Assembly: GCF_000315625.1 (NCBI RefSeq)
Contig: NW_005434555.1
Span: 1 to 64,000 of the forward strand
Direction of reading: 5' to 3'
DNA from: Guillardia theta CCMP2712
Lineage: Eukaryota; Protista; Cryptophyta
Length of the DNA stretch: 64,000 nucleotides
The notes beneath the pieces are model-generated. The model worked only from the letters and a program-made list of their open reading frames with translations. It was not told the DNA's origin and made no database searches. This document shows, in pieces, positions 6,001 through 23,278 of this stretch. The position numbers and the translations under genes were made by a program. Numbering within the stretch: position 1 is the stretch's first letter; each line of letters begins with the position of its first letter.

Positions 6001-7912
6001 TCTCTCCTCTCCCCCGCCCTACCTGCACGAGCCGTCCCTCCCCCGACACCGCCCGTGTCCGCTGCAGTTGACCTTGGCTATGCACCCTCCCTCGCACTCG
6101 CCTCCGTATCGGTTTCTCCTGCACGCCTCGCACCTCGTCCCCGCGAGTCCTCCGTAGCACTCGCACCGCCCTTGCAAGCANNNNNNNNNNNNNNNNNNNN
6201 NNNNNNNNNNNNNNNNNNNNNNNNNNNNNNNNNNNNNNNNNNNNNNNNNNNNNNNNNNNNNNNNNNNNNNNNNNNNNNNNGCCCGCTATCCTCTCCCCCG
6301 CAGTCGGCGTCCGTCTGGCATGTTCCCTCGCGTCCTGCCGTCGCGTTCGCCGGCTCGGAGCAGTTCTGTCCCGTGTAGCCCCCGAAGCACCTGCCCACGC
6401 CCTTCCCGTCAGCCCCTCCTCTCCTCCCTCCTGTCTATCTCCCCTCTCCTACTACCATCCCCGTCTCTGCCGCCCTGCCCCTCTGCCGCCCTGCCCCTCC
6501 TGTCTCCCGGCGCCCGCTCGCCCCTCTTCTCCCCCTGGCTCTTTCCTCTCGTGCTCTCCCTTCCCTCCCCGTCCTCCCTCCCGGCTCTCTCCTCTCCCCC
6601 GCCCTACCTGCACGAGCCGTCCCATCCCCGACACCGCCCGTGTCCGCTGCAGTTGACCTTGGCTATGCACCCTCCCTCGCACTCGCCTCCGTATCGGTTT
6701 CTCCTGCACGCCTCGCACCTCGTCCCCGCGAGTCCTCCGTAGCACTCGCACCGCCCTTGCAAGCATCGCCCGCTATCCTCTCCCCCGCAGTCGGCGTCCG
6801 TCTGGCATGTTCCCTCGCGTCCTGCCGTCGCGTTCGCCGGCTCGGAGCAGTTCTGTCCCGTGTAGCCCCCGAAGCACCTGCCCACGCCCTTCCCGTCAGC
6901 CCCTCCTCTCCTCCCTCCTGTCTATCTCCCCTCTCCTACTACCATCCCCGTCTCTGCCGCCCTCCCCCTTGCCGCCCTGCCCCTCCTGTCTCCCGGCGCC
7001 CGCTCGCCCCTCTTCTCCCCCTGGCTCTTTCCTCTCGTGCTCTCCCTTGCTCCCCCGTCCTCCCTCCCGGCTCTCTCCTCTCCCCCGCCCTACCTGCACG
7101 AGCCGTCCCATCCCCGACACCGCCCGTGTCCGCTGCAGTTGACCTTGGCTATGCACCCTCCCTCGCACTCGCCTCCGTATCGGTTTCTCCTGCACGCCTC
7201 GCACCTCGTCCCCGCGAGTCCTCCGTAGCACTCGCACCGCCCTTGCAAGCATCGCCCGCTATCCTCTCCCCCGCAGTCGGCGTCCGTCTGGCATGTTCCC
7301 TCGCGTCCTGCCGTCGCGTTCGCCGGCTCGGAGCAGTTCTGTCCCGTGTAGCCCCCGAAGCACCTGCCCACGCCCTTCCCGTCAGCCCCTCCTCTCCTCC
7401 CTCCTGTCTACATCCCTCCTCCCGGCTCTCTCCTCTACCCCGCCCTACCTGCACGAGCCGTCCCATCCCCGACACCGCCCGTGTCCGCTGCAGTTGACCT
7501 TGGCTATGCACCCTCCCTCGCACTCGCCTCCGTATCGGTTTCTCCTGCACGCCTCGCACCTCGTCCCCGCGAGTCCTCCATAGCACTGGCATTGGTTGTT
7601 GAGGCATAACTGTCCTACTGTTTCATTACAGTCTTGGTCGGTATTGCATGATAAAGTATATGATCTCAATTGGAAGCGGCTGGATCGGAAATCCTTTTCG
7701 TTGGGGAGTTTTTTTCTCATGAGTGTGGTTTGTTTTAAAGAGATTATTGTTGACAGGATGGAAGTATTTGATGTTGACAAGATGGATGTGTTTGAGGTGG
7801 ACATGATGGTTGCGTTTCTGGAAGGGGGTAGGGACATTTCAGCAGAACAGGCCTGCAGCAGGAGGACGAAGACTATGCTTCCCATCGCCCTCCTGTGCTC
7901 GCGTCTTGCCAT
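15..7912 (-). CDS. Giant secreted/surface cysteine-rich protein: signal peptide, EGF/laminin-EGF-like exons, then many GCC2/GCC3 (ephrin-receptor-like/TNFR-like) Cys repeats
   Basis: ATG at 7912 gives MARREHRRAMGSIVFVLLLQACSA. EGF-like exons (C..CYGGLAGTRC..C..NCSGHGRC) are joined by gtaggg...cag introns. The last acceptor ttttgcag at 5909 opens a long exon of CxxCPxGxY...CxxCP...C-x-C repeats. Frame break near 1974-2033 and an N gap at 6181-6280. The 3' end is uncertain. Confidence 0.8.
41..5775 (-). repeat. Coding tandem array, 1356-bp (452-codon) unit, ~4.2 copies
   Basis: The anchor ctgtgcaggttgtcgatccc recurs at 41, 1397, 2730, 4086 and 5442 (spacings 1356, 1333, 1356, 1356). Units differ by only a few substitutions. 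Confidence 0.97.
5950..7580 (-). repeat. Tandem exon+intron repeat (~486-bp unit; EGF-like exon plus GA-rich intron)
   Basis: Identical 93-aa ORFs at 6604-6885 and 7090-7371 are offset by 486. Further partial copies lie at 6020-6398 and 7445-7580. Confidence 0.9.
6181..6280. other. Assembly gap (100 N)
   Basis: A run of N inside the EGF exon repeat. The flanks abut almost exactly in the repeat unit, so the true copy number is unknown. Confidence 0.99.
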
Positions 7913-8489
7913 GTCAACAACGCGGCGTATGATGTGAAATTCTAATTCAATAATGTTGGCTGAATTGCTAGTCACCTGGTAGCTTATTCGCCAGAGTCCA
8001 CCCTTCTTTGAAAAGCTTTAAATGCCACACTAATCAGTCTGTTGGCTCCTTGAAATCCTCGTGCTGAGCAGCCGGAGTTTCATAATAACACGCCATTTAC
8101 AGATGGAATAGTCAATACAAGGGGTCTTGCTGAAGAGAAATTGCATTTCTTGTGGGTAGGGGTATACCCCTACCTACCCAGCAATGGATTTCATTACCCC
8201 ACCAATATCTACTACCCTTCAAATTCCCTTGTATATTACCCGTACACATTGGTTTGCCCCCCCTGCTCCCGACCACCACCTGCACTGTTGTGACGCTTTT
8301 CAACAGTGAATGAACAACAATAACTAAAACTTTGTACGGTACTAGTACTGATTTTTAACTTAATTTTGAGTAAACTGTACGGGATTAGGCCGAGCGCGCA
8401 CGTGACGGCACTAGCTAGAGGTTATGCTGAGTCAACCGAGTCGCTGAGACTCGGACCGGGAACCGAGTTTACTCAAAGTTAACTTAAGT

Positions 8490-9675: not shown

Positions 9676-12600
9676 TTACAATTCAGCAAAAGCGGACGAC
9701 AGCTGAAGTCCAAGAGTCTCTGCCACGCCCTTAAGTCCCTGTGATAGTCATTCAGTTCCCTCCCTCTCTGCTGACATCGGCTCACCCCGTACTTGGATCG
9801 CACTGCATCGGCCAGACCCCGGAAGCCAGACGCTCGCATGGCAGCATAGGATGGCATCGTGTCTGGTGAGCAGAGAGCCTCTGCCAGCTCGAGCACCTGT
9901 ATCCAGCGCGTGAGATGCTTGCCATGCATGGAGAAAGAGTGCGTGAGATGCTGATAATTGTTATGCGTGGAGAGACAGTGCGTGAGGATCCAGAAAACAA
10001 GAGAAAATTGCCTAAAGAGACAAGAAGAAAGAAGAAGAGGAGAAGAATGAGGTACCGCTTGGCGAACGTGACTGAACTTGTTCCAGTGCGACGGATCGTT
10101 GACAACGCCATGACCTATGGCAGCGCTCCGAGTGGAATGATGGATCTACGAGTTCTTCTGTCAGCTCCTTGAGATGCTTGCAGAAGCATCACCTGCATCG
10201 ACAGCCTCGTTGCCACCGCCTCGATCCCCCCGTGATAGTGCATGACGGCGTCAGCAACCTACTGCAGATCAGGGCAACCAGGACGCGCGAGCCCAACTCA
10301 CTCCGCTCATCCCTGCCGCCCTCAGATCCGCTTCTGATGGCATGCAACCATGTCTCCCCCGCTGAAGAAACAACCCTCACACTCTGACCAGGCAAAAGGT
10401 GACAGGATGAGGAGATATGACAAAGGGAGAGTGAAGGAAGAGACTGCACCTGTGCCGCAAGCCACTCGGCTGCTTCTTCGACGAGACTGATGTCCTCATA
10501 CTTCCTGAAGTCTTTGCCTGTGAGACGAGGAGGAGGAGGATGATAGTTGGCGCTGCTGGGACGATGAGTGCTTTGCGTTCGAGTCCTCCTCTCCTCATCC
10601 CAGAAAGGTTTTCCCCCGCCGTCAGCATGCGACGACTGAAGGTTGGAATTTCTGCTCCTCACCAGCGCCCCTGCAAGGTTTCCCGCAACTGCCTGCCCTC
10701 CCAAGGCCAAGGATCCTCCGTCCGGTCGCCCCCCCGCTCGTCTCCTTGGCTTCCCAGCTGCAGGACGGAATTCATCATACACCATCCGGGGGCGGGCCGA
10801 GCTGCCACGCAGCTGGGCTGTCTGCTGGCGGAAGACATCCATTTGCTGATGGAGCTGCCCCTGCAAGGTATGGGCATCGCCGTATACCCGGACCTGAGAA
10901 GAGACAGTCCTAGCGTCCACGTTGGAGAGCTTCGCCACTGATTGCATCCCTGCTGTCACCTCCGCACTGGCTGCCTTTACCTTGAGTTACTTTCTGAAGC
11001 GAGACAGGGGCAGGCAACAGTGGATTCGAGCAAGAAAAGAGGCGCAGATAGATGGAGAGATCAGAGTGAGAAGCAGTGGAGTGAGACACGCAGAACAGAC
11101 GATTTGAGATGAGGGATCGCGAGAGTCGGTGCTCAGGAGGAATCTTGTTACCTGCAATGAATTTCGCAGTCTTTCAAGCTCAGAGTGCAGGATGTCTCTT
11201 TCTTCTCTCAGCGTTGCTATTGCATGCTCACTCCGAGCTACCGCATCTTCCAGCTGCATCCTTAAACTTGCCACCTCAGATTTATAACCTTGCGCCTCCC
11301 CATGGAACCTGTATAATCCTCAGTCATACTGAAACACTTTTCTCCTTCCGGTCCTCCTCGTCCTTCACCTCCACTTACTTCTCTGCTCTTCCCTCCGACT
11401 CTCCCAACTTGATGTTCAGCTGCTGCACATCTGCCTCGAGCCGCTTGTTGATTGCCTTGCATGCCTCCGTCTCCGCCTTCATCTCTTCATACTTGGGTCG
11501 CAAAATCTCAAGCTCCCTAATGAATTAGTGATGCGTCAATGAAAGATCAGTGAGTACTAAAACTGGAAGGAGATGGGGAGGGGGTCAATGAAAGAAAAAA
11601 AGAAGGATAGAGAAACAGGAGGGTGGGAAGTAGAATCGAGATGGATGAAAGAGAAGAGGCAAAATTTGAAGGGAAGAGCGAGACGAGCGAAAATTTGGAG
11701 GACCCAGGTAAGAGGAAGAGGCGAGGAGGAGCACAATAGAGAAGCGAACCGAAGAATGCGGTCTCTTTCATCTTGGATCTGCTTGAAGCCATTGGCTGAA
11801 TTGTTTCCATTCATCCCGGCGCTTTTTAAGGCAACAAGCTCGTATCGCATCCTCTCGTAGTCCTTCTTCATCGCTTCTAGGTCCTTCATCGAGTCTCGCA
11901 GCACCTCCAGCTCCTTCTGTAGTTTCTCGTTCTCGTTCATGTACATCTTTCCACGTGACTCTGACTGTTTAAAATTTCAGCTCGTGCACTCGAATTGCCC
12001 GATTGCCCCCCTTCAATCGGTCTTCCCCATGTTGCCCACTTCCTCCCTCCCCTGCCTCTGCTCCCCTCCTCCCTCCTTCCTATCTCTCTTCTATCCCTCA
12101 CCTCCCCGTAAGCCTTTCGCAAGTCGTTGATGGTTGTTTCAAAGGTGTCGGTGCTCTCGTGCAGGCTTCGTAGCGTCTCGTCCTTCTTCTTTCTCGCGTC
12201 ATCGAGTTGAATCTGAAGTGACTTCACTTCCGCCAGCGCCTGCCAGCCCCATGTCAGTGGAGAGAAAGCTCTTCTGAACATACGTGCCTCCTCTCCTCGC
12301 ATCTTCCACTCCTCCTCTGATCGTCGGCATTGGCGAACTTCGACTAACAACGTGGAGGACTGTTTCTCGAGTCTCTGTACCGCTGCTGTTTGTACAGCAA
12401 GAGAAGCCTCCGCGCTGCTCAGAGTCTTTCCCAGCTCATCTCTCTCCTCCTCCAGCCGCTCAACAGTCTTGTGAAGCTGGTCGATTTTCTCTTTACGTGA
12501 GCTAATCTCGTCCTCCATCCTAGTTCTAATGGCAAGTATTTCTCTCTTCCACGAGTTCTCTTTCTCTTCCCAGCTCTCGAGCGCCCTGTAGCCGTCTCTA

Positions 12601-13777
12601 TTCCTCTGCTTCTCCTCCGTAAGCTCTGCCTCGAGTCTCTGACGCAGCAAGTGAGCTCAAGCAATCGAAAATCTGCGAGCATGTGTAGAAGAGGAGCAGG
12701 ACGCAGTGGACAAAGAGGCAAAGGAGCCAGAAAGAAGTTGGGACCAGCGAAGGTTTTACCTGCACAGCGGCTGTCTGCACGGCCAGAGTTGCCTCAGCAC
12801 TCTGAAGAGACTCGCGCATCAGCTGCCACTCAACTTGCAGCCTGTCTCGTTCTGCTTGCAGAGACTTGACGCTCGAGGCCTTCGTCGATTCCCACGATTC
12901 GCTTTTCGATCTCCATGCCAACAGCTCTGAAAAACACGAAGTCTCACTACCATCCATCTCCCACTCTGCCTCCTCCTCTCCAATCGCTTCGCCTTGCTCT
13001 CAATTTGTCAGGATACTACATACCTGCCGAGAAAGCTTCTGCCTTAGCTCTCCAATTGTCCGCCTCCTGCTTAGACTCTCTCAGACTTCGCTCCTTTCCG
13101 TTCAGTTTATCCTCTAGCTCGTCCAGCCGCTCAATCGCTGCTTGTTGAGTAGCAATTTTCTCTGCGTCCAGCAGTCTCAATCTGTTGTACTCGTTGTTCT
13201 GTGCCTTAAGCTGCATCAGTTGTTCGCGCATCGATTCGATGTCCCCCGACCCGCTTAGCTGTTCTAGCTTGAGTCGATATTCCTCACACTTACTTCGCCA
13301 TTCGTTTTGAGATTCTCTCACTTGTCGAAGCTCTTCGGTCAGCTGCTTGATCTGCGCGTTGCTCTTCTCCACCAGCTCTGTCTGAACTTTCAACGCAATC
13401 TCCGACGCCTCCTCCGATTGACGGCTGACCCGGAGGTCTTCATAACACTTTCCAAGCTCATCTTCCAGTCGGTCTGATCTCTGAGCACTCTCGTTCATGA
13501 CAGCAGAGGCTTCTGACAGCATGTGTCGCAGGGTGTGCAGTTCCGCCATGACGACAGCCTGCCCTGCACCCTGCAACCCTGACCCTGCCCCTACACTGGT
13601 GCTTCCGTCTCCTCTCAGGTAGATCTGGACTTGGTCGGCGACCCTGCCGCCAGCATCGAGAGGCTTGTGGGGTCGCATATCTTGTCCTACACCATGTCTG
13701 CCCCTCATCTGCTGCTCTAACTCTTTTGCCTGCGCCTCCAGGCCCTCGAACCTCCTCCTCCTCCCACCGCCTTCCAT
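9676..13777 (-). CDS. Long coiled-coil protein with two C-terminal MPS..L..AG...A.AV...GG...VA..L repeats
   Basis: E/K/Q/L-rich heptad exons at 11000-13600. The spliced C-terminus reads CMPSEADLRAAGMSG|VADAVMHYHGGIEAVATRLSMQ and TMPSYAAMRASGFRGLADAVRSKYG|GLKGVAETLGLQLSSAFAEL*. Confidence 0.75.
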
Positions 13778-14216
13778 GCCCGATTCCCAACGGATCATAA
13801 CCCCTACCACCCCTTTGTTTTCACGACCAGGTACTCTGATATGACAAGTAAGGGTTTGTGACGGTAGCACAAGTACCCCCCTACCCCTTTCAACCGACTT
13901 TGAAAGCGAGTAACCACGTCCCCCCTCTGACCAGTAAAATCCTGATGCGGGCCTGGACTGCGACAAATATTTTTCTCTAAGAATCGCAGGTCAGAACTCT
14001 TCACAAATCCTGCAGGTTTCATTCATGCATTGCGACGCCCGAGCAGGGGCAGGGCAGCAGGCGGGGGAGGGAGAGAGGAGGAGGAGGAGGAGGAAGTTGC
14101 TATAAAGGTGGTAGCCTGTCAAATGTGCCCTATGGACACTCTGCTAACAAGCAACACGTACCTTTACGTATCTTCTGTATCCAGTTTCCTTGAATGAGTC
14201 GGATCAGGAAGCGAAG

Positions 14217-17364: not shown

Positions 17365-20133
17365 TCATTCAGCCGCGATATGATAGCTGCTCGAGTCCTG
17401 AATGTGACAAGAAGGGATCAGGAAAAGTAATGCGCAGATGGTGGGGAGAAGGAGCTTGCCTGCTCAAGCCAGTTTTGTAGGCTGTTGCCAATTCTTCCAG
17501 CTCTTCGAGGTCTGCTTGTGTCAAAGGAGCGTGTAAACATCAGCGGTTCTCACCTGCAACGTCGAGCTGAACCATATTCAGTCTCTGCAGTACCTGAGGA
17601 GAAGACCTGTGAGGCCTGTTCAAGCCTGTGAGCGAAGACAAGACCTGCAGAGTTGAGTGTTGCGCTTCTGTGCCCATGCCTCGTATCTTGCTTGATCGTG
17701 CTGGACGTGAGCTGATGAAGGTTCCTGTGCTTACCCTCTCAACTCCCCATCGGGTAGCCAGTACGATCCCCTCCTGCGAAATCTGTCGTTTAGGGTTGGG
17801 CCATTCCATGCCATTCCTTCTACTTCTCTCTGCGCTTCCCCTCGCTTCTTACCAGTTTCTCTACTATGCTGATCCTCGACTCCTTGCCAATGCAGACGGC
17901 ACTGATGGACCATGGCTAAAAAGCATCAGCAGAATTCGATTGCAGCTCAAGTTACCTTGCGAAGATGACCAACTGGTAGGCGAGAGAGTTCAAGCGCAGG
18001 AGAGCCGAAGGCAAACAAAGCGATCAGACTTTCATCAGCGTTCACCTACAACCAAGAAACATGAATCCGGAGGTTCAGAGTAGCCACAGCGGGAGGAGGG
18101 GGAGAAGAAGCTCACATGGAGAATGATATCTTGGCCGTCAGACAGTCTTTGCGTATCCTCGTCTGCTTCTGTGGAAGAAAACGTCCCCTGATAGCAGTTG
18201 AGATATCCAGCAGAAGGCAGGACGAGGGCACAGAAAGAAGAGAACAAATAAAGGAAAACAGAAGCATGACCTTGCCCAAATGCAAATCATCAGATCGCAA
18301 TGCAAAAGCCGCCTGAAAGATTGTCAGCATTATATTATCGGTCACGGAGAAAGGATAGAGTTGGGGGCGTTGAGCAGGTCGATTGTCAGTGAAGAGAGCA
18401 AAGGTAGCAGAAGGGATGTGGGGCTTTACGGAGTTCCCATCGGATGAAGTCAGGCCGACGTAGCCATCGATAACGCTGTCGAGCTGAGAAGCAATCGAGC
18501 ATTTGAGATGGGAACACATGAAACGCAACGCCATGAAGGATCCTTACCTTGCCGATATTAAATCGAAAATTGTGGATCCCATAGGAAAGACTGGGTTGGA
18601 GGAAACCTTGCATTCTTGAGCACAATCAGCATAATGGAAGAATAGCGATTGTCAACCAAAGAAGGTTGAGAGCGCGGGGGGAAGGGGCAGAGAAAGTAGA
18701 ATGGTTCACCTTGGTCCTCGAAGATCTGGAGAGGTCGGAACGGATTGAAAAGAATCAGAGTCAAAATCGAGGGATTGGAAAGTGAAGGCGAGCTTCGTGT
18801 CTTCCTCCTTCTTGCTGGCTTCTCTCTCATACTCTTTCTCTCTCCGTCTCAGAATCTCCACATCTGTTCGCAGATTCGTAATAATGCTCTCCATCTCCTT
18901 CTTCATCTCTGCAATCTCCTTCGATTTTTCCTCCTTCTCCCGCTTGAGATGGATGTGCACCTGCTCAACCTCCGCTTTCATGCGAAGCTCATAGTCCTCC
19001 TTGAGTTTCTTCATTGCCAACTTGATTTCCGAGCAGTTCGCCTCCTTCGCCTGCAGCTCTTCTCCTTGTTTCTCCAACAAAGCCTTCTGTGCTGAGATCT
19101 GCCTGTGTGCTACCTGTATATCCTCTGAGAGTTTTATGTTGGTGTCCCGCTCAAGCTTCAGCTCTGCCTCGGCTCTCTTCAGCTGGGCCAGTATGTAAGT
19201 AGGTGTGCTGCTCCGGCTCGGATGACTGGCGGGGTCAAGAGCGTGACCTTCCTTCACCTGGGGAAGAGACGTCCCGCTGCAGAACAAAGTCTCCACAAAT
19301 CGCTTCTGGTCTTGCGCCACTTGCGAGATTGTTTCCAACAGTTTAATGTTGAGTTCCGTCAACACTTGATGAAGACCCCCCACACTTGACCTTACCAGCT
19401 CCTCCTCCTCCTCTATCTGGACTCCCTTTTCCCATCGTCCATACATTGTTCTCATCTTCTTCGATCGGCGGGAGTAAGCAGGTTTTCTGATTATTCCGAT
19501 ACCATGTCGCAGACCCTCCTTGAACTCTCCCATGTATGTCTCTTTTTCACCTTGGACTGCCTCCTCAACCCCGAAACCGTTCTTTTCTCCATCCTTGAAC
19601 ATTCCTCCATACAAACGCTGCTCCTCCTCTAAGAAGCCCAACCCGCTCTGGTATCCATAATGAAACTCACCAGCATATTTTAACGACCTCGAGGAAGGCA
19701 TGAGATCAAGCACACCAAGTCCATGAAAGAAACCATCCTTCCACATGCCATGATACTTCGATCCATCCTGTGGAATCTGTCAGGATCCTCCGAATCACCT
19801 CATCCCTGAGACCATTTGTGCTGCTTTCCCGCTGGACTCAGAATCTCCCCTACTCCCACCATCCTTCCCGGTCATTGACTCAGAATCTCCCCTACTCCCA
19901 CCATCCTTCCCGGTCATTCACTCAGAATCTCCCCTAATCCCACCATCCTTCCCGGTCATTCACTCAGAATCTCCCCTACTCCCACCATCCTTCCCGGTCA
20001 TTGACTCAGAATCTCCCCTACTCCCACCATCCTTCCCGGTCATTGACTCAGAATCTCCCCTACTCCCACCATCCTTCCCGGTCATCTCTTCTCCTCTCAT
20101 CACCTCGAACTTCACGTCGATAGCTTGCTGCAT
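17365..20133 (-). CDS. MORN-repeat protein with a central coiled coil
   Basis: Exon 1 MQQAIDVKFE, then DGSKYHGMWKDGFFHGLG, YAGEFHYGYQSGLG, YGGMFKDGEKNGFG and YMGEFKEGLRHGIG, followed by an E/K-rich coil. The 3' exons are approximate. Confidence 0.8.
19835..20085 (+). repeat. 42-bp minisatellite x6 inside intron 1 of the MORN gene
   Basis: gactcagaatctcccctactcccaccatccttcccggtcatt at 19835, 19877, 19919, 19961, 20003 and 20045. Confidence 0.95.
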
Positions 20134-20513
20134 CTCGACTAGATTGTTTCAAACATCGCACCCGCCTCCAGCCCGCCTCTGGCCCCACAGCTCTGGCCCC
20201 GCCTCAGCAGGGCAGTAGGGTGTAATAGCGGGGATGGGGGTTCTTAAAAATGGGGGCCATCAAGGAAGAGGGACGGATTTGATGATGAGAGGAGAGGAGA
20301 GAGAGTGAGAGGAGGAGGAGAGAAGAGATGGTGGGAGGAGGAGGAGAGAAGAGACGGTAAGAAGGACAGGGAGAGGAAGAGGACAGTGAGATGGGATCAA
20401 ATGAGACTGAAAGAATCTTGCATACCACAAGAATTCAGATGACGCAATGTCTGGATGTCCCTGCAAATTTGACTGAACATGAACAAAAATGAATTTATTC
20501 CAGGTTTTGGAAG

Positions 20514-22468
20514 ATGAAGTTGTTTCAAAGATGGTTGATGGCTCACGCCTTGTTACTCTCTGTTCTTGTCCAGCCGCTCAAATCATTCAGCACTGGAGGG
20601 ATTGACCTGATGTATAGACACCTCAATCAACACTTTGGAAGAGCTAGGCGACATGACTTGTTTGATAAGATCAGGACTGCAACATTCAGATGTGCTACCA
20701 TGACAAATAAGAACAAAATCTGCATGATGGGCGATGACCTGAAGCTTCAAGTTAGCACAGTGATGGGACTCGAAGCCCTCGTGAAGCAGGAGCTTGAAGA
20801 GCTTGGATACTCCAATTGCCTTGCTAAGAATGGCAGAGTGGAGGTACAAGCTCCCTCCTCTGCCATCCCTCGTCTCAACATCAACCTTCGCACAGCCAAT
20901 CGAGTACTCCTTGAGGTGCTTCTTTCTGCTCGTGTTGATCTCGCTCTTAACAAGACAGCAGCTTGCGGAGTTCGAGGCTTGCTCCTTTGACGAGCTCTTC
21001 GATGGCGTGTCTGCAATAGAATGGAAGCGCTGGGTCCCCAAAGGCGCATCGTTCCCAGTGGTTGGAAAGAGCGTCGACTCTATCCTCCACAGTGTGCCTG
21101 CCTGTCAGTCTATCTGCAAGAAGGCGATTTCTTCTTCACTTACAAATGGCATGGGATCTGTGACAAAGGAAAATTGGGTGGAGGAAGATCCTAGGAACGG
21201 AGTGTGTGAGGTTGAGGTAGCAATCAGCAAGAATTTGGTGAAGATTTCGATCGATACGAGTGGAGCTGCGTTGAGCAGGAGAGGGTATCGCACAAAAGTG
21301 TTGGATAATGGAGCCCCGCTCAAAGAGACCCTTGCAGCCGGCATTCTCATGTTGAGGTGAAAGCTGAACCTTGAAACAACCATCATGTTCCCCCATCCTC
21401 CTCTTGAATGTCCTTCATCCTTCCCATCTCTTCTTACTCCTCCAACAGCCGTTGGACTCCAGACCGACCTCTATACGATCCTTTCTGTGGCAGTGGAACC
21501 ATCCTTCTTGAAGCAGGTCTGCTGAGCCTTCATGTGCTCTTGTTAAACGCCCTCCAGCACTCATGGGAAGGAAAATCGCTCCCGGGATGCGGCGCTCCTT
21601 TGCGGCAGAATCGATTTCAACATTGAGCCCTGCGAGGTTGGATGCACCTTGATATGCAGTCGCTGAGTAGGAGATGCAGTGAATGGGCGCAGGCACGGGA
21701 GGAAGCGAAAGGGAAGGAAGTGGAGGAGAAGGTGGCTCGCAAACAGCTGCGACTGTTCGGCTCCGACATCGACCAACGCGCCGTCCAATTGACTCACTCA
21801 CATCTAAGAGCAGCAGACGTCCAGCAGCACGTGCAGCTTAGCGTTGCTGATGTAGCACGCGTTGCTCCTCCTCCTGGCGAGTTTGGATGCATTGTAACGA
21901 ACCCACCGTATGGGATGCGATTGGGAGAGTCGCAGCGAGCAAACGAAGAGCTGGTGCGGTGAATAATGAAGATGGAGGGCGGAAGAGGAGTTCAAAGATG
22001 GGGAAGGAGGTCACGGAGAGGAGTCATGAGGAGTGGAGGAATGAAGGACTCCGTGAAATTTTGAGGGAAGATAGAGATGACTTTGTAAACAGGCATCTCT
22101 TTGGAGGAAACTTGACACCTGGAGTTTGTTTGCTCTGAGCGGAGATGTTCACTTCGAGGAGGTGAGATTTGACTGTTCCATCTCCATCTGAAACTTAGCA
22201 GGATATTGGGAGGAAAGCAACCAAGCGCAGGAAGCTCTACAACGGGAAGTTGCCATGCCAGGTCCTGCAGAGGAAAGCAAGAAGAGGGAGTCTCATTTCG
22301 CCTTAGCTCTACCAGTACTTCGGACCCCTTCCCCCTCGTCCCCCTCGAAATTCGCCTCCAGCAGACGCAGTCAATGTGCTCTTCATATTCGTTGCCCACA
22401 GAAAATTCGCAAGAAGCGCATGCAGTCTGAGCGCATGTGCAGCATCAGGCTGGAACGAAGATCAAGAG
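20514..22468 (+). CDS. THUMP-domain RNA m2G methyltransferase (RlmL/YpsC-like), probably plastid-targeted; continues in frame into a YkgJ domain
   Basis: Motifs GLEALVKQEL, LRTANRVL, IDTSGAALSRRGYR, PLKETLAAGIL, DPFCGSGT, GSDID, NPPYG and KRRKLYNG..C|LYQYFG. Hydrophobic leader ending ...PLKS-F. Confidence 0.9.
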
Positions 22469-22514
22469 GTATGCGGAAGGCAAGAAAGGATTACGACTGG
22501 TCACTGTCATGCAG

Positions 22515-23278
22515 ATGGTCAATGTCAGAATCGATCGCTGGGTTTGCATCAAGAACTGTGGTGCCTGCTGCTATTTGGGTGAGACGAGGGGAATTTTCAA
22601 TGACACAGGGAGGAGCGGACGGGTGGAGGGAGTCAGAGGAGAGGAGATGAAGGAAGGGTGTAGGGTGTAGAATATAGTCTGACACATGCATTCAATCAGC
22701 TCCTGACTTCGGTCCTGAGCCACCTGAAGACCCTGAAGATGCTCAAAAGGTTCTTGTCGTGCTGAGCGATGAAGCCTAACTTTCCCTAGTTCAAGGAGAT
22801 GATCGGAGAAGACGGTTGGTGCGTCAACCTCGACAAAGAAACCAAGTAATCTTATTCTTCCACTCTTCTACTTTTGACCTCAACGTCCTTCGGCCTGAAC
22901 GACTGATCTGCAGACGGTGTCGGATCTATCAAGACCGGCCTTCATTTTGTCGGACAAGTGCAGAAAATTTTGAGGTGATCGGGGATCAGCTCGAGACTCG
23001 TGCTGCCCTTGACTCTGTTATTTTTCACGCCAGCGGTTGTACAACGTGCCAAAGCGAGACTTCCAAGAAGTCGCTATCGGAGCTTGCAAGGTGATGGAGG
23101 CGGAGCAGAGGCGGATGAGGAGCGGGACGTTGAAGCGTTTGCAGCAAACCATCATCGACGTGTTTGGCGATGAATCTCTCGAGTATGACAGGTGAGCGAG
23201 ACGACCGTGTACTGGCCTCTCAAGGATGCTGCAGGTACTTGAGGGCTGTAGGGGAAGACAGTGATGAAGATTATTGAG
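22515..23278 (+). CDS. YkgJ-family (CxxCxxCC, putative Zn/Fe-chelating) domain exons
   Basis: Spliced: WVCIKNCGACCYL|APDF...|MIGEDGWCVNLDKETK|RCRIYQDRPSFCR...|IGACK|QTIIDVFGDESLEYDR|YLRAVG..*. Resembles the cyanobacterial/plant type. Confidence 0.88.

What the first reader, a model, noticed from the sequence alone, without database searches (positions are those of the whole stretch)
20514..23278. RlmL/THUMP RNA methyltransferase fused in frame to a YkgJ Cys-cluster domain
Seen: after the 45-nt intron 22262-22306 the exon reads LYQYFGPLPPRPPRNSPPADAVNVLFIFVAHRKFARSACSLSACAASGWNEDQE with no stop. A phase-0 intron (22469-22514) then joins MVNVRIDRWVCIKNCGACC. Known: bacterial RlmL/YpsC proteins end shortly after YQY(F/W)G or continue into RlmK, and the function of YkgJ is poorly defined. 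Inference: a Rosetta-stone link placing plastid YkgJ in RNA modification. Alternatively it is a recent gene merger, because the Ser/Ala/Arg-rich linker looks like a remnant transit peptide.
Basis: partly seen in the sequence, partly recalled or inferred. Interest (0 to 1): 0.7.

Follow-up and report, generated by a model that had tools for sequence, protein, structure and literature searches.

The report
RlmL methyltransferase gene merged with YkgJ
In the alga Guillardia theta, a plastid-directed rRNA methyltransferase gene runs without a stop codon, across one small intron, into a cyanobacterial-type cysteine-cluster gene; this looks like a lineage-specific gene merger that the public annotation already records, and it gives little evidence about what YkgJ does.

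Summary

The gene is Guillardia theta GUITHDRAFT_117968. Its public 494-aa model already fuses the two halves. That model is wrong in detail: it omits the leader, the conserved LYQYFGP exon and two conserved YkgJ exons.

The first 15 residues of exon 8 match the RlmL end/hinge of a bacterial RlmKL. Position 22469 is the only AG|GT donor in that exon. The exon lengths add up to 504 + 143 codons, in frame.

No transcript evidence could be reached. I put a real fused mRNA at about 0.7.

The Rosetta-stone inference is not supported:
- The cyanobacterial orthologue of the YkgJ half is a stand-alone protein of about 120 aa.
- It was never near rlmL. In about 38 genomes with both genes on one contig, the closest pair was 51 kb apart.
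- In 9 of 12 loci it sits directly upstream of the hmx1/hmx2 manganese-importer genes.
- The RlmL half is not cyanobacterial in type (30% identity).
- G. theta keeps a canonical stand-alone YkgJ paralogue with its own leader.

Interest is modest.

The parts
20514..20915 (+). Exon 1: leader (signal-peptide-like MKLFQRWLMAHALLLSVLV..KSF, then a basic Ser/Thr/Arg-rich stretch) plus the RlmL ferredoxin-like N-terminal domain
   Evidence: RlmL_1st 3.2e-18. The extension is conserved in relatives (ATFRCA / STWRCA / ATWRCA). The public model starts only at 20763.
20959..21356 (+). Exon 2: THUMP domain. The acceptor may instead be 20961 (NAGNAG), as in the public model.
   Evidence: THUMP 4.9e-9. 86% identity to Hanusia phi P0004 and 57-60% to environmental relatives.
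21449..21516 (+). Exon 3: SAM-binding motif I (DPFCGSGT)
   Evidence: UPF0020 7.9e-9
21558..21636 (+). Exon 4
   Evidence: Colinear with P0123 and relatives. Flanking introns of 41 and 43 nt are canonical.
21680..21953 (+). Exon 5: methyltransferase core with motif IV (TNPPYG)
   Evidence: UPF0020 9.2e-16. PDB 3k0b 5e-79 and E. coli RlmL 3v8v 8e-45 for the public protein.
22093..22161 (+). Exon 6
   Evidence: 100% match to P0123 residues 324-346
22202..22261 (+). Exon 7 (..KLYNGKLPCQ)
   Evidence: Matches P0123. Homologous to cyanobacterial ..VYNGSIEC...
22307..22468 (+). Exon 8: conserved RlmL end (LYQYFGPLPPRPPRN), then a 39-residue linker with a relic-leader look. It has no stop. The public model omits this exon.
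   Evidence: Bacterial RlmKL L021 reads ..CTYFQFLGPRPPGN.. at the same place. Hydrophobic core VNVLFIFVA. No relative of the linker among 1.84 G representative proteins.
22469..22514 (+). Junction intron, 46 nt, phase 0. If retained, the RlmL frame ends at TGA 22580-22582.
   Evidence: gag|GTATGC...ATGCAG|atg. It is the only AG|GT donor in exon 8.
22515..22578 (+). YkgJ exon 1 (MVNVRIDRWVCIKNCGACCYL): first four cysteines
   Evidence: 77-85% identity over 13 residues to cyanobacterial WQCVKNCGACC
22700..22749 (+). YkgJ exon 2 (acidic, Pro-rich loop)
   Evidence: Present in P0123. Shorter than the cyanobacterial loop, and the invariant R21 and L28 are lost.
22790..22845 (+). YkgJ exon 3 (..MIGEDGWC..). 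The public model omits it.
   Evidence: tblastn to L007/L008. 79% identity to Hanusia P0002.
22914..22974 (+). YkgJ exon 4 (CRIYQDRPSFCR). The public model omits it.
   Evidence: CxxCxxCC 1.1e-3. tblastn 4e-8 to 9e-7. Present in Hanusia P0002.
23034..23191 (+). YkgJ exon 5: C-terminal helices with an insertion of about 18 residues. One Cys of the conserved CC pair is kept.
   Evidence: Aligned to L008. Compared with invariant columns.
23235..23277 (+). YkgJ exon 6 and the TGA stop (23275-23277)
   Evidence: 100% match to the P0123 C-terminus

Best explanation
This is one nuclear gene of Guillardia theta, with public model GUITHDRAFT_117968. It arose by merger of two neighbouring genes of different ancestry.

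The 5' part encodes a leader of the cryptophyte signal-peptide-plus-Phe type. It also encodes a complete RlmL/YpsC-type enzyme: the ferredoxin-like N-domain, THUMP, and a Rossmann methyltransferase with DPFCGSGT and TNPPYG motifs. By homology, this enzyme should N2-methylate a guanine of plastid 23S rRNA (G2445 in E. coli numbering).

The reading frame does not stop after the conserved end LYQYFGP-PP. It runs through a 39-residue linker that looks like a decapitated leader peptide. A 46-nt phase-0 intron then joins it to a divergent duplicate of the cyanobacterial UPF0153/YkgJ cysteine-cluster protein.

The product would be about 647 aa (504 + 143 codons). The metal-binding YkgJ module has no leader of its own and would enter the plastid on the RlmL leader.

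Shown: the sequence, frames, splice signals, domain identities, conservation of both halves in Hanusia, and the fused public model. Inferred: that the fused mRNA and protein exist, the plastid location, the rRNA target, and that the fusion is a tolerated merger and not a functional coupling.
For: - Frames and splice sites.
- Exon lengths add to 1512 and 429 nt, in frame (coordinates).
- Domains by exon.
- The start of exon 8 is homologous to a bacterial RlmL end/hinge, and cyanobacterial RlmL ends at the same place.
- The YkgJ exons are colinear with the cyanobacterial protein, which starts MATWQC right at the domain.
- Only about 164 nt lie between the conserved RlmL end and the first YkgJ codon, and there is no in-frame ATG in the linker.
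- The public model is also fused.
- No stand-alone product of 57-231 aa carrying these YkgJ exons exists among 5.8 G proteins, apart from a Hanusia fragment.
- Hanusia exons are about 75-86% identical, while the introns differ in length and sequence.
- The stand-alone paralogue on C104 has a leader exon, an intron and then the mature domain.
- The junction DNA is single-copy in the assembly.
Against: No transcript, read or peptide evidence could be consulted. The public model uses another junction (22261 to 22443) and may be purely ab initio.

The first codon of the YkgJ exon is ATG, and a second ATG lies at 22509. An internal promoter could therefore yield a leaderless stand-alone protein.

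Genes here can be close: the next start codon lies about 285 nt after the stop.

The junction could not be seen in any other species.
Confidence: 0.6

Rival explanations
1. These are two separate, tightly packed genes. The RlmL mRNA ends in or near the 'junction intron', either using the TGA at 22580-22582 or polyadenylating earlier. A second transcript starts within exon 8 or the intron and is translated from ATG 22509 or 22515. That gives a leaderless YkgJ protein of about 143-145 aa, presumably cytosolic.
For: ATG sits exactly at the start of the YkgJ domain exon, and another lies two codons upstream. Cyanobacterial orthologues start 3 residues before the conserved Trp. The family is stand-alone everywhere else that was examined. 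Short intergenic spacers occur in this window, for example about 285 nt to the next gene.
Against: The RlmL coding frame would overlap the YkgJ start by about 70 nt. There would be no room for a 3'UTR plus a promoter. A canonical donor and acceptor pair of typical length restores the frame exactly. A cyanobacterial-type protein would lack a leader, while its paralogue has one. No stand-alone product is on record. The public annotation fuses the two.
Confidence: 0.2
2. The fusion is real and functionally coupled, a true Rosetta stone. In this reading the YkgJ metal/Fe-S module works with the RlmL module on plastid rRNA. It might act as a second modification activity or as a redox or metal sensor, taking the place that RlmK holds in bacterial RlmKL.
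For: The fusion point is the same GP-PP hinge at which bacterial RlmL continues into RlmK. A YkgJ homologue, DpdM, has been linked experimentally to methylation of a nucleobase in DNA (bioRxiv 10.1101/2023.04.13.536721). Both halves are conserved in Hanusia.
Against: The orthologue is never fused to or near rlmL in the sampled cyanobacteria; the closest pair is 51 kb apart. Its conserved neighbours are the hmx1/hmx2 Mn-importer genes, in 9 of 12 loci. The fused copy is the divergent duplicate: it has lost the invariant R21, L28 and F87 and one Cys of the CC pair, and it carries an insertion. The linker looks like an accidental relic. The fusion was not seen in any other lineage.
Confidence: 0.12
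3. This is an assembly or sequencing artefact. A deletion or collapse near 22350-22515 removed the RlmL stop, the spacer and the YkgJ start.
For: The linker looks like a leader peptide without its first residues. No independent assembly of this stretch could be found.
Against: The frame, a canonical intron and the phase all fit, which a random deletion would give only about one time in three for frame alone. The region is single-copy with no alternative contig. An independent ENA contig of the same gene, covering exon 2, is 100% identical across the exon itself, with one substitution in the flanking intron.
Confidence: 0.05

Closest known systems
RlmL / YpsC-type THUMP-domain class I SAM-dependent RNA methyltransferases (E. 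coli RlmL part of RlmKL, PDB 3v8v; Firmicutes homologues PDB 3k0b, 3ldu, 3ldg)
   Same: It has the full domain set: RlmL_1st, THUMP and UPF0020, with motifs DPFCGSGT and TNPPYG and the C-terminal ..YNG..C..Y.Y(F)GP-PP end.
   Different: It is eukaryotic, intron-rich and carries an N-terminal leader. It is only 30% identical to cyanobacterial RlmL. It continues at the hinge into a YkgJ module, where the bacterial proteins stop or continue into RlmK.
Bacterial bifunctional RlmKL (NF008748; example L021 from a metagenome, at least 747 aa)
   Same: It is a two-module protein joined at the same Gly-Pro-...-Pro-Pro hinge after the RlmL methyltransferase fold.
   Different: The second module here is a cysteine-cluster domain of about 143 aa, not the RlmK m7G methyltransferase.
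Cyanobacterial UPF0153 / YkgJ-family protein (Pfam CxxCxxCC, PF03692), the third gene of the hmx1-hmx2 operon (bioRxiv 10.1101/2023.02.16.528846)
   Same: It has the same Cys pattern (C-x3-C-x2-CC, GWC, C-x-IY-x2-RP-x-FC) and is colinear over the whole length.
   Different: It is fused, not stand-alone. It is a divergent duplicate with lost invariant residues and an insertion. No transporter context applies in a eukaryote. The cyanobacterial protein gives a confident model (pLDDT 89.7) with no solved structural relative.
GUITHDRAFT_117968 (XP_005822798.1, UniProt L1IHV1), the public model of this locus
   Same: It is the same gene with the same two halves in one product.
   Different: The public model lacks the leader, exon 8 (LYQYFGP plus the linker) and YkgJ exons 3 and 4. 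It reads through the 46-nt intron in another frame.

Membership tests
RlmL/YpsC THUMP RNA methyltransferase | N-terminal ferredoxin-like domain (RlmL_1st, PF22020) | tested here: met
   3.2e-18, 65.9 bits against a cut-off of 27. Single copy in the genome.
RlmL/YpsC THUMP RNA methyltransferase | THUMP domain (PF02926) | tested here: met
   4.9e-9, 36.9 bits against a cut-off of 20.6
RlmL/YpsC THUMP RNA methyltransferase | UPF0020 Rossmann methyltransferase with SAM motif I and the NPPY-type motif IV | tested here: met
   PF01170 7.9e-9 and 9.2e-16 on two exons. DPFCGSGT and TNPPYG can be read in the sequence.
RlmL/YpsC THUMP RNA methyltransferase | Conserved C-terminal strand and hinge | tested here: met
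   ..LPCQ|LYQYFGPLPPRPPRN against ..IECTYFQFLGPRPPGN in L021, and ..CTLLKYELY-stop in cyanobacteria
RlmL/YpsC THUMP RNA methyltransferase | m2G methylation of 23S rRNA (G2445) | not testable with these tools
   Inferred from homology to E. coli RlmL (8e-45)
YkgJ / CxxCxxCC (PF03692), cyanobacterial UPF0153 subgroup | Pfam model over its gathering score | tested here: inconclusive
   The domain is split over six short exons. The best single exon scores 20 bits against a cut-off of 23. The joined product was not searched.
YkgJ / CxxCxxCC (PF03692), cyanobacterial UPF0153 subgroup | Invariant cysteines C6, C10, C13, C14, C46, C56, C66 | tested here: met
   All seven are present in the window exons (against the alignment)
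YkgJ / CxxCxxCC (PF03692), cyanobacterial UPF0153 subgroup | Other invariant or near-invariant residues (R21, L28, F87, C91-C92 pair) | tested here: not met
   R21, L28, F87 and C91 are replaced, and there is an insertion of about 18 residues before the ..VFG.. motif
YkgJ / CxxCxxCC (PF03692), cyanobacterial UPF0153 subgroup | Stand-alone protein of about 115-145 aa | tested here: not met
   No stop and no in-frame start lie upstream, so it is fused to RlmL. Open frames around the match were 115-215 aa in nearly all cyanobacterial hits, with two longer (262 and 298 aa).
Rosetta-stone (functionally informative) fusion | The same pair is fused or neighbouring in independent lineages | tested here: not met
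   No fusion and no neighbourhood was found in the 301-genome sample of the cyanobacterial phylum. The closest pair is 51 kb apart among about 38 genomes with both genes on one contig. Other eukaryotes could not be searched.
Rosetta-stone (functionally informative) fusion | A single mRNA and a single polypeptide | not testable with these tools
   No reads or transcript tool was on hand. Only Hanusia fragments read through introns were found.
Cryptophyte bipartite plastid-targeting leader | Signal peptide followed by Phe at the start of a Ser/Thr/Arg-rich transit peptide | tested here: inconclusive
   MKLFQRWLMAHALLLSVLVQPLKSF.. was read by eye. A relative's transcript, P0006, has a comparable leader. 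No predictor was available.

The most novel reading that the evidence does not exclude
The fused protein is real, and the YkgJ metal-cluster module is a working partner of the rRNA methyltransferase in the cryptophyte plastid. It would occupy the place of RlmK in bacterial RlmKL. It might act as a second nucleobase-modifying activity, as proposed for the YkgJ homologue DpdM, or as a metal or redox switch on ribosome biogenesis. That would give the first functional handle on the near-universal cyanobacterial and plastid UPF0153 protein.
Probability: 0.12. Interest if true: 0.6.

Novelty: new variant of a known kind. Interest (0 to 1): 0.3.

Why it matters
If the fused protein exists, it is an undescribed domain architecture: THUMP/RlmL joined to CxxCxxCC. 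It would also be a neat case of a plastid protein that lost its own leader and now rides on its neighbour's.

The practical gain is a corrected gene model for GUITHDRAFT_117968. The corrected model has a leader, the conserved C-terminal exon and two restored YkgJ exons, for about 647 aa against the public 494.

The hoped-for clue to YkgJ function is weak. The widely conserved association of the orthologue is with Mn-importer genes, not with RNA modification.

Tried and rejected
- **Big representative search.** I searched the 91-aa open stretch of exon 8. No relative of the linker came up, only a low-complexity 1072-aa hit. The public model lacks this exon, so the blank says nothing about transcripts.
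- **Word searches.** These gave Hanusia fragments, the public model (through its cluster) and N-terminal environmental relatives. None reaches the junction.
- **Contigs of relatives, L018-L020.** They end at or before exon 5. P0006's Logan contig came without DNA.
- **Metagenome scan with the C-terminal part of the public protein.** It found only a bacterial RlmKL (L021). This was useful for the hinge and nothing else.
- **Exact look-ups.** I looked up the Hanusia fragment, the genomic ORF across the junction and the public protein. None is on record.
- **Long open frames of 531-605 aa around RlmL_1st in some non-photosynthetic members of the phylum.** I checked three as possible bacterial fusions. 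In one, the RlmL frame ends at normal length. In the other two, the longest frames were GC-rich overlaps that hid the RlmL frame. No cysteine-cluster domain was seen.
- **The shared 'AAC' tag in the two Hanusia names.** It does not show one contig, because the numeric prefixes differ.
- **Fold search of the cyanobacterial YkgJ model.** Foldseek E was at least 3.6 and the best VIA Z was 2.9, so no solved relative was found.
- **Literature searches.** No paper describes this fusion.
- **Steps not taken.** The spliced (joined) protein was never assembled, searched or folded; all searches were exon by exon or used stored public proteins.
Full report
**What is there**

The window belongs to an 87-Mb assembly of 669 contigs. 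A cluster look-up identifies the gene as Guillardia theta CCMP2712 GUITHDRAFT_117968 (XP_005822798.1, L1IHV1).

On the + strand, a series of short exons separated by canonical introns of 40 to 139 nt can be read directly.
- Exons 1-8 span 20514-22468. Scanned one by one, they give RlmL_1st (3e-18), THUMP (5e-9) and UPF0020 (8e-9 and 9e-16). NCBIfam places them along the RlmL part of RlmKL.
- The stretch 22469-22514 has a gag|GTATGC donor and an ATGCAG| acceptor, and is 46 nt long and phase 0.
- Six further exons (22515-23274, stop 23275-23277) align colinearly with a cyanobacterial YkgJ-family protein.

The peptides and coordinates in the finding are exact, apart from an end coordinate that is one base too far. 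Exon lengths add to 1512 nt (504 codons) and 429 nt (143 codons). I did this arithmetic from coordinates only. The joined protein was never built or sent to any tool; every search was exon by exon or used stored public proteins.

**Is the junction credible?**

- Exon 8 begins LYQYFGPLPPRPPRN. A bacterial RlmKL found in a metagenome (L021, 42% identical to the RlmL half) reads ..CTYFQFLGPRPPGN.. at the same place and then continues into RlmK. Cyanobacterial RlmL stops at ..KYELY. So exon 8 is a real coding exon, and its first 15 residues are the native RlmL end/hinge.
- Among the seven GT sites in exon 8 up to its end, only 22469 has the AG|GT form. Ten of this gene's 11 other donors have that form, and the eleventh is GG|GT.
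- The frame stays open for 39 codons past the conserved end (P about 0.13 by composition), and the intron restores the YkgJ frame exactly.

Only about 164 nt separate the conserved RlmL end from the first YkgJ codon. The linker holds no in-frame ATG.

**The public model**

The public 494-aa model also fuses the halves, in a different way.
- It starts at 20763, so it has no leader.
- It splices 22261 to 22443 and reads through the 46-nt stretch in frame 0.
- It omits exon 8 and YkgJ exons 3 and 4, which carry the conserved GEDGWC and CRIY..RP.FC motifs.

That model is therefore wrong in detail. It also explains why the big search with the linker found nothing. The fusion itself is already in the databases, unremarked, as a hypothetical protein.

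**Relatives**

The sister genus Hanusia phi (EukProt) has both halves.
- P0004 covers exons 1-2 at 86% identity in the THUMP exon.
- P0002 covers YkgJ exons 3-5.

Both are translations through unspliced introns, and they sit on different contigs. They show conservation of the exons against diverged introns, but not the junction.

No stand-alone product of 57-231 aa carrying these YkgJ exons exists among 5.8 G proteins. Environmental relatives at about 60% identity have a comparable leader, but their contigs stop before the junction. No transcript or read data could be reached. That is the main gap.

**Ancestry and context of the two halves**

The YkgJ half is of cyanobacterial type.
- Its orthologue is a single-copy protein of about 120 aa that begins MATWQC. 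It was found in 125 of 301 genomes sampled from the cyanobacterial phylum, including genomes of 1.6-1.8 Mb.
- RlmL_1st genes occur in 126 of the same 301 genomes.
- In about 38 genomes where both genes lie on one contig, the closest pair is 51 kb apart. None is fused.
- Instead, the orthologue sits directly upstream, on the same strand, of two half-size GDT1/UPF0016 genes. This holds in L007 and L008 and in 7 of 10 closed genomes. It is the hmx1-hmx2 manganese-importer operon, whose third gene a preprint already calls a UPF0153 member of unknown function.

The RlmL half is only 30% identical to cyanobacterial RlmL. It is nearer to Firmicutes-type proteins (PDB 3k0b 5e-79; 44-48%).

G. theta also keeps a more canonical YkgJ paralogue on contig C104. 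That copy is 56-60% identical to cyanobacteria and has its own signal peptide plus Phe transit peptide on a separate exon, followed by an intron just before the domain.

The fused copy is the divergent one. It keeps the seven invariant cysteines. It has lost R21, L28, F87 and one Cys of the CC pair, and it carries an insertion.

**Reading**

The linker after the RlmL hinge has a 9-residue hydrophobic core (VNVLFIFVA), then HRK-F and a Ser/Ala-rich stretch. That is the layout of a cryptophyte leader without its first residues.

The simplest history has two steps.
- A duplicate of the plastid YkgJ gene lay downstream of the RlmL gene.
- A small deletion removed the RlmL stop, the spacer and the YkgJ start. 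The old leader exon became a linker, and the old leader/mature intron became the junction intron.

The YkgJ module then reaches the plastid on the RlmL leader. I put a real fused mRNA at about 0.7. That splits into about 0.6 for a tolerated merger and about 0.12 for a true functional coupling. Separate genes with internal initiation get about 0.2, and an assembly artefact about 0.05.

**On function**

By homology, the RlmL module should make m2G in plastid 23S rRNA. This is an inference.

For YkgJ, a model of the cyanobacterial orthologue is confident (pLDDT 89.7), but it has no solved relative. Foldseek E was at least 3.6, VIA Z was at most 2.9, and there was no PDB sequence match.

Two leads point in different directions.
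- The conserved operon with Mn importers points towards metal handling.
- One paper links a YkgJ homologue, DpdM, to methylation of a DNA base.

**Verdict**

The architecture is undescribed in the literature searched but already present in the public annotation. Interest is modest. The useful product is a corrected gene model and a clear RNA-seq test.

Noticed in passing
window 19770-20133: Tandem direct repeats of about 42 nt (attgactcagaatctcccctactcccaccatccttcccggtc) lie just upstream of the gene. They read as repeated TQNLPYSHHPSRS in one frame. A purine-rich GGAGGAGAGAAGAGA stretch follows at 20280-20380.
   Followed up: no
window 6001-8000 and 12001-14000: There is strong strand asymmetry: GC skew -0.35 and AT skew -0.37 at 6-8 kb, and -0.25 and -0.22 at 12-14 kb. 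These stand out from the rest of the window.
   Followed up: no
window 20763-23274 (public model P0123): The public protein GUITHDRAFT_117968 lacks the leader, the conserved LYQYFGP exon and two conserved YkgJ exons. It translates a 46-nt intron in another frame.
   Followed up: yes
L002 (G000:C104:70847-74044), 1215-1900: This is a stand-alone cyanobacterial-type YkgJ paralogue. It has its own signal peptide plus Phe transit peptide exon, and no introns inside the core domain.
   Followed up: partly
L001 (G000:C54) and L004 (G000:C26): Two further CxxCxxCC genes of another subtype (CTGCGKCC / CTQCGKCC) each have a signal-peptide-like leader.
   Followed up: partly
L007 9992-11507; L008 9992-11227: The cyanobacterial ykgJ orthologue lies directly upstream of two half-size GDT1/UPF0016 (hmx1/hmx2) genes. 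A DUF4149 gene follows on the opposite strand in both loci. The arrangement recurs in 7 of 10 closed genomes.
   Followed up: yes
model m999bd3fc3b8d (L007:9992-10348): The confident AlphaFold model of the cyanobacterial YkgJ orthologue (pLDDT 89.7) found no detectable relative among solved structures.
   Followed up: yes
P0002, P0004 (EukProt Hanusia phi): Both Hanusia entries are translations through retained introns. The underlying contigs are therefore unspliced RNA or genomic DNA, not mature mRNA.
   Followed up: partly
window 23564 onward: The next gene on the same strand starts about 285 nt after the stop, with a signal-peptide-like MAGRKPILLVVMLLWG... This shows how tightly genes are packed here.
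   Followed up: no
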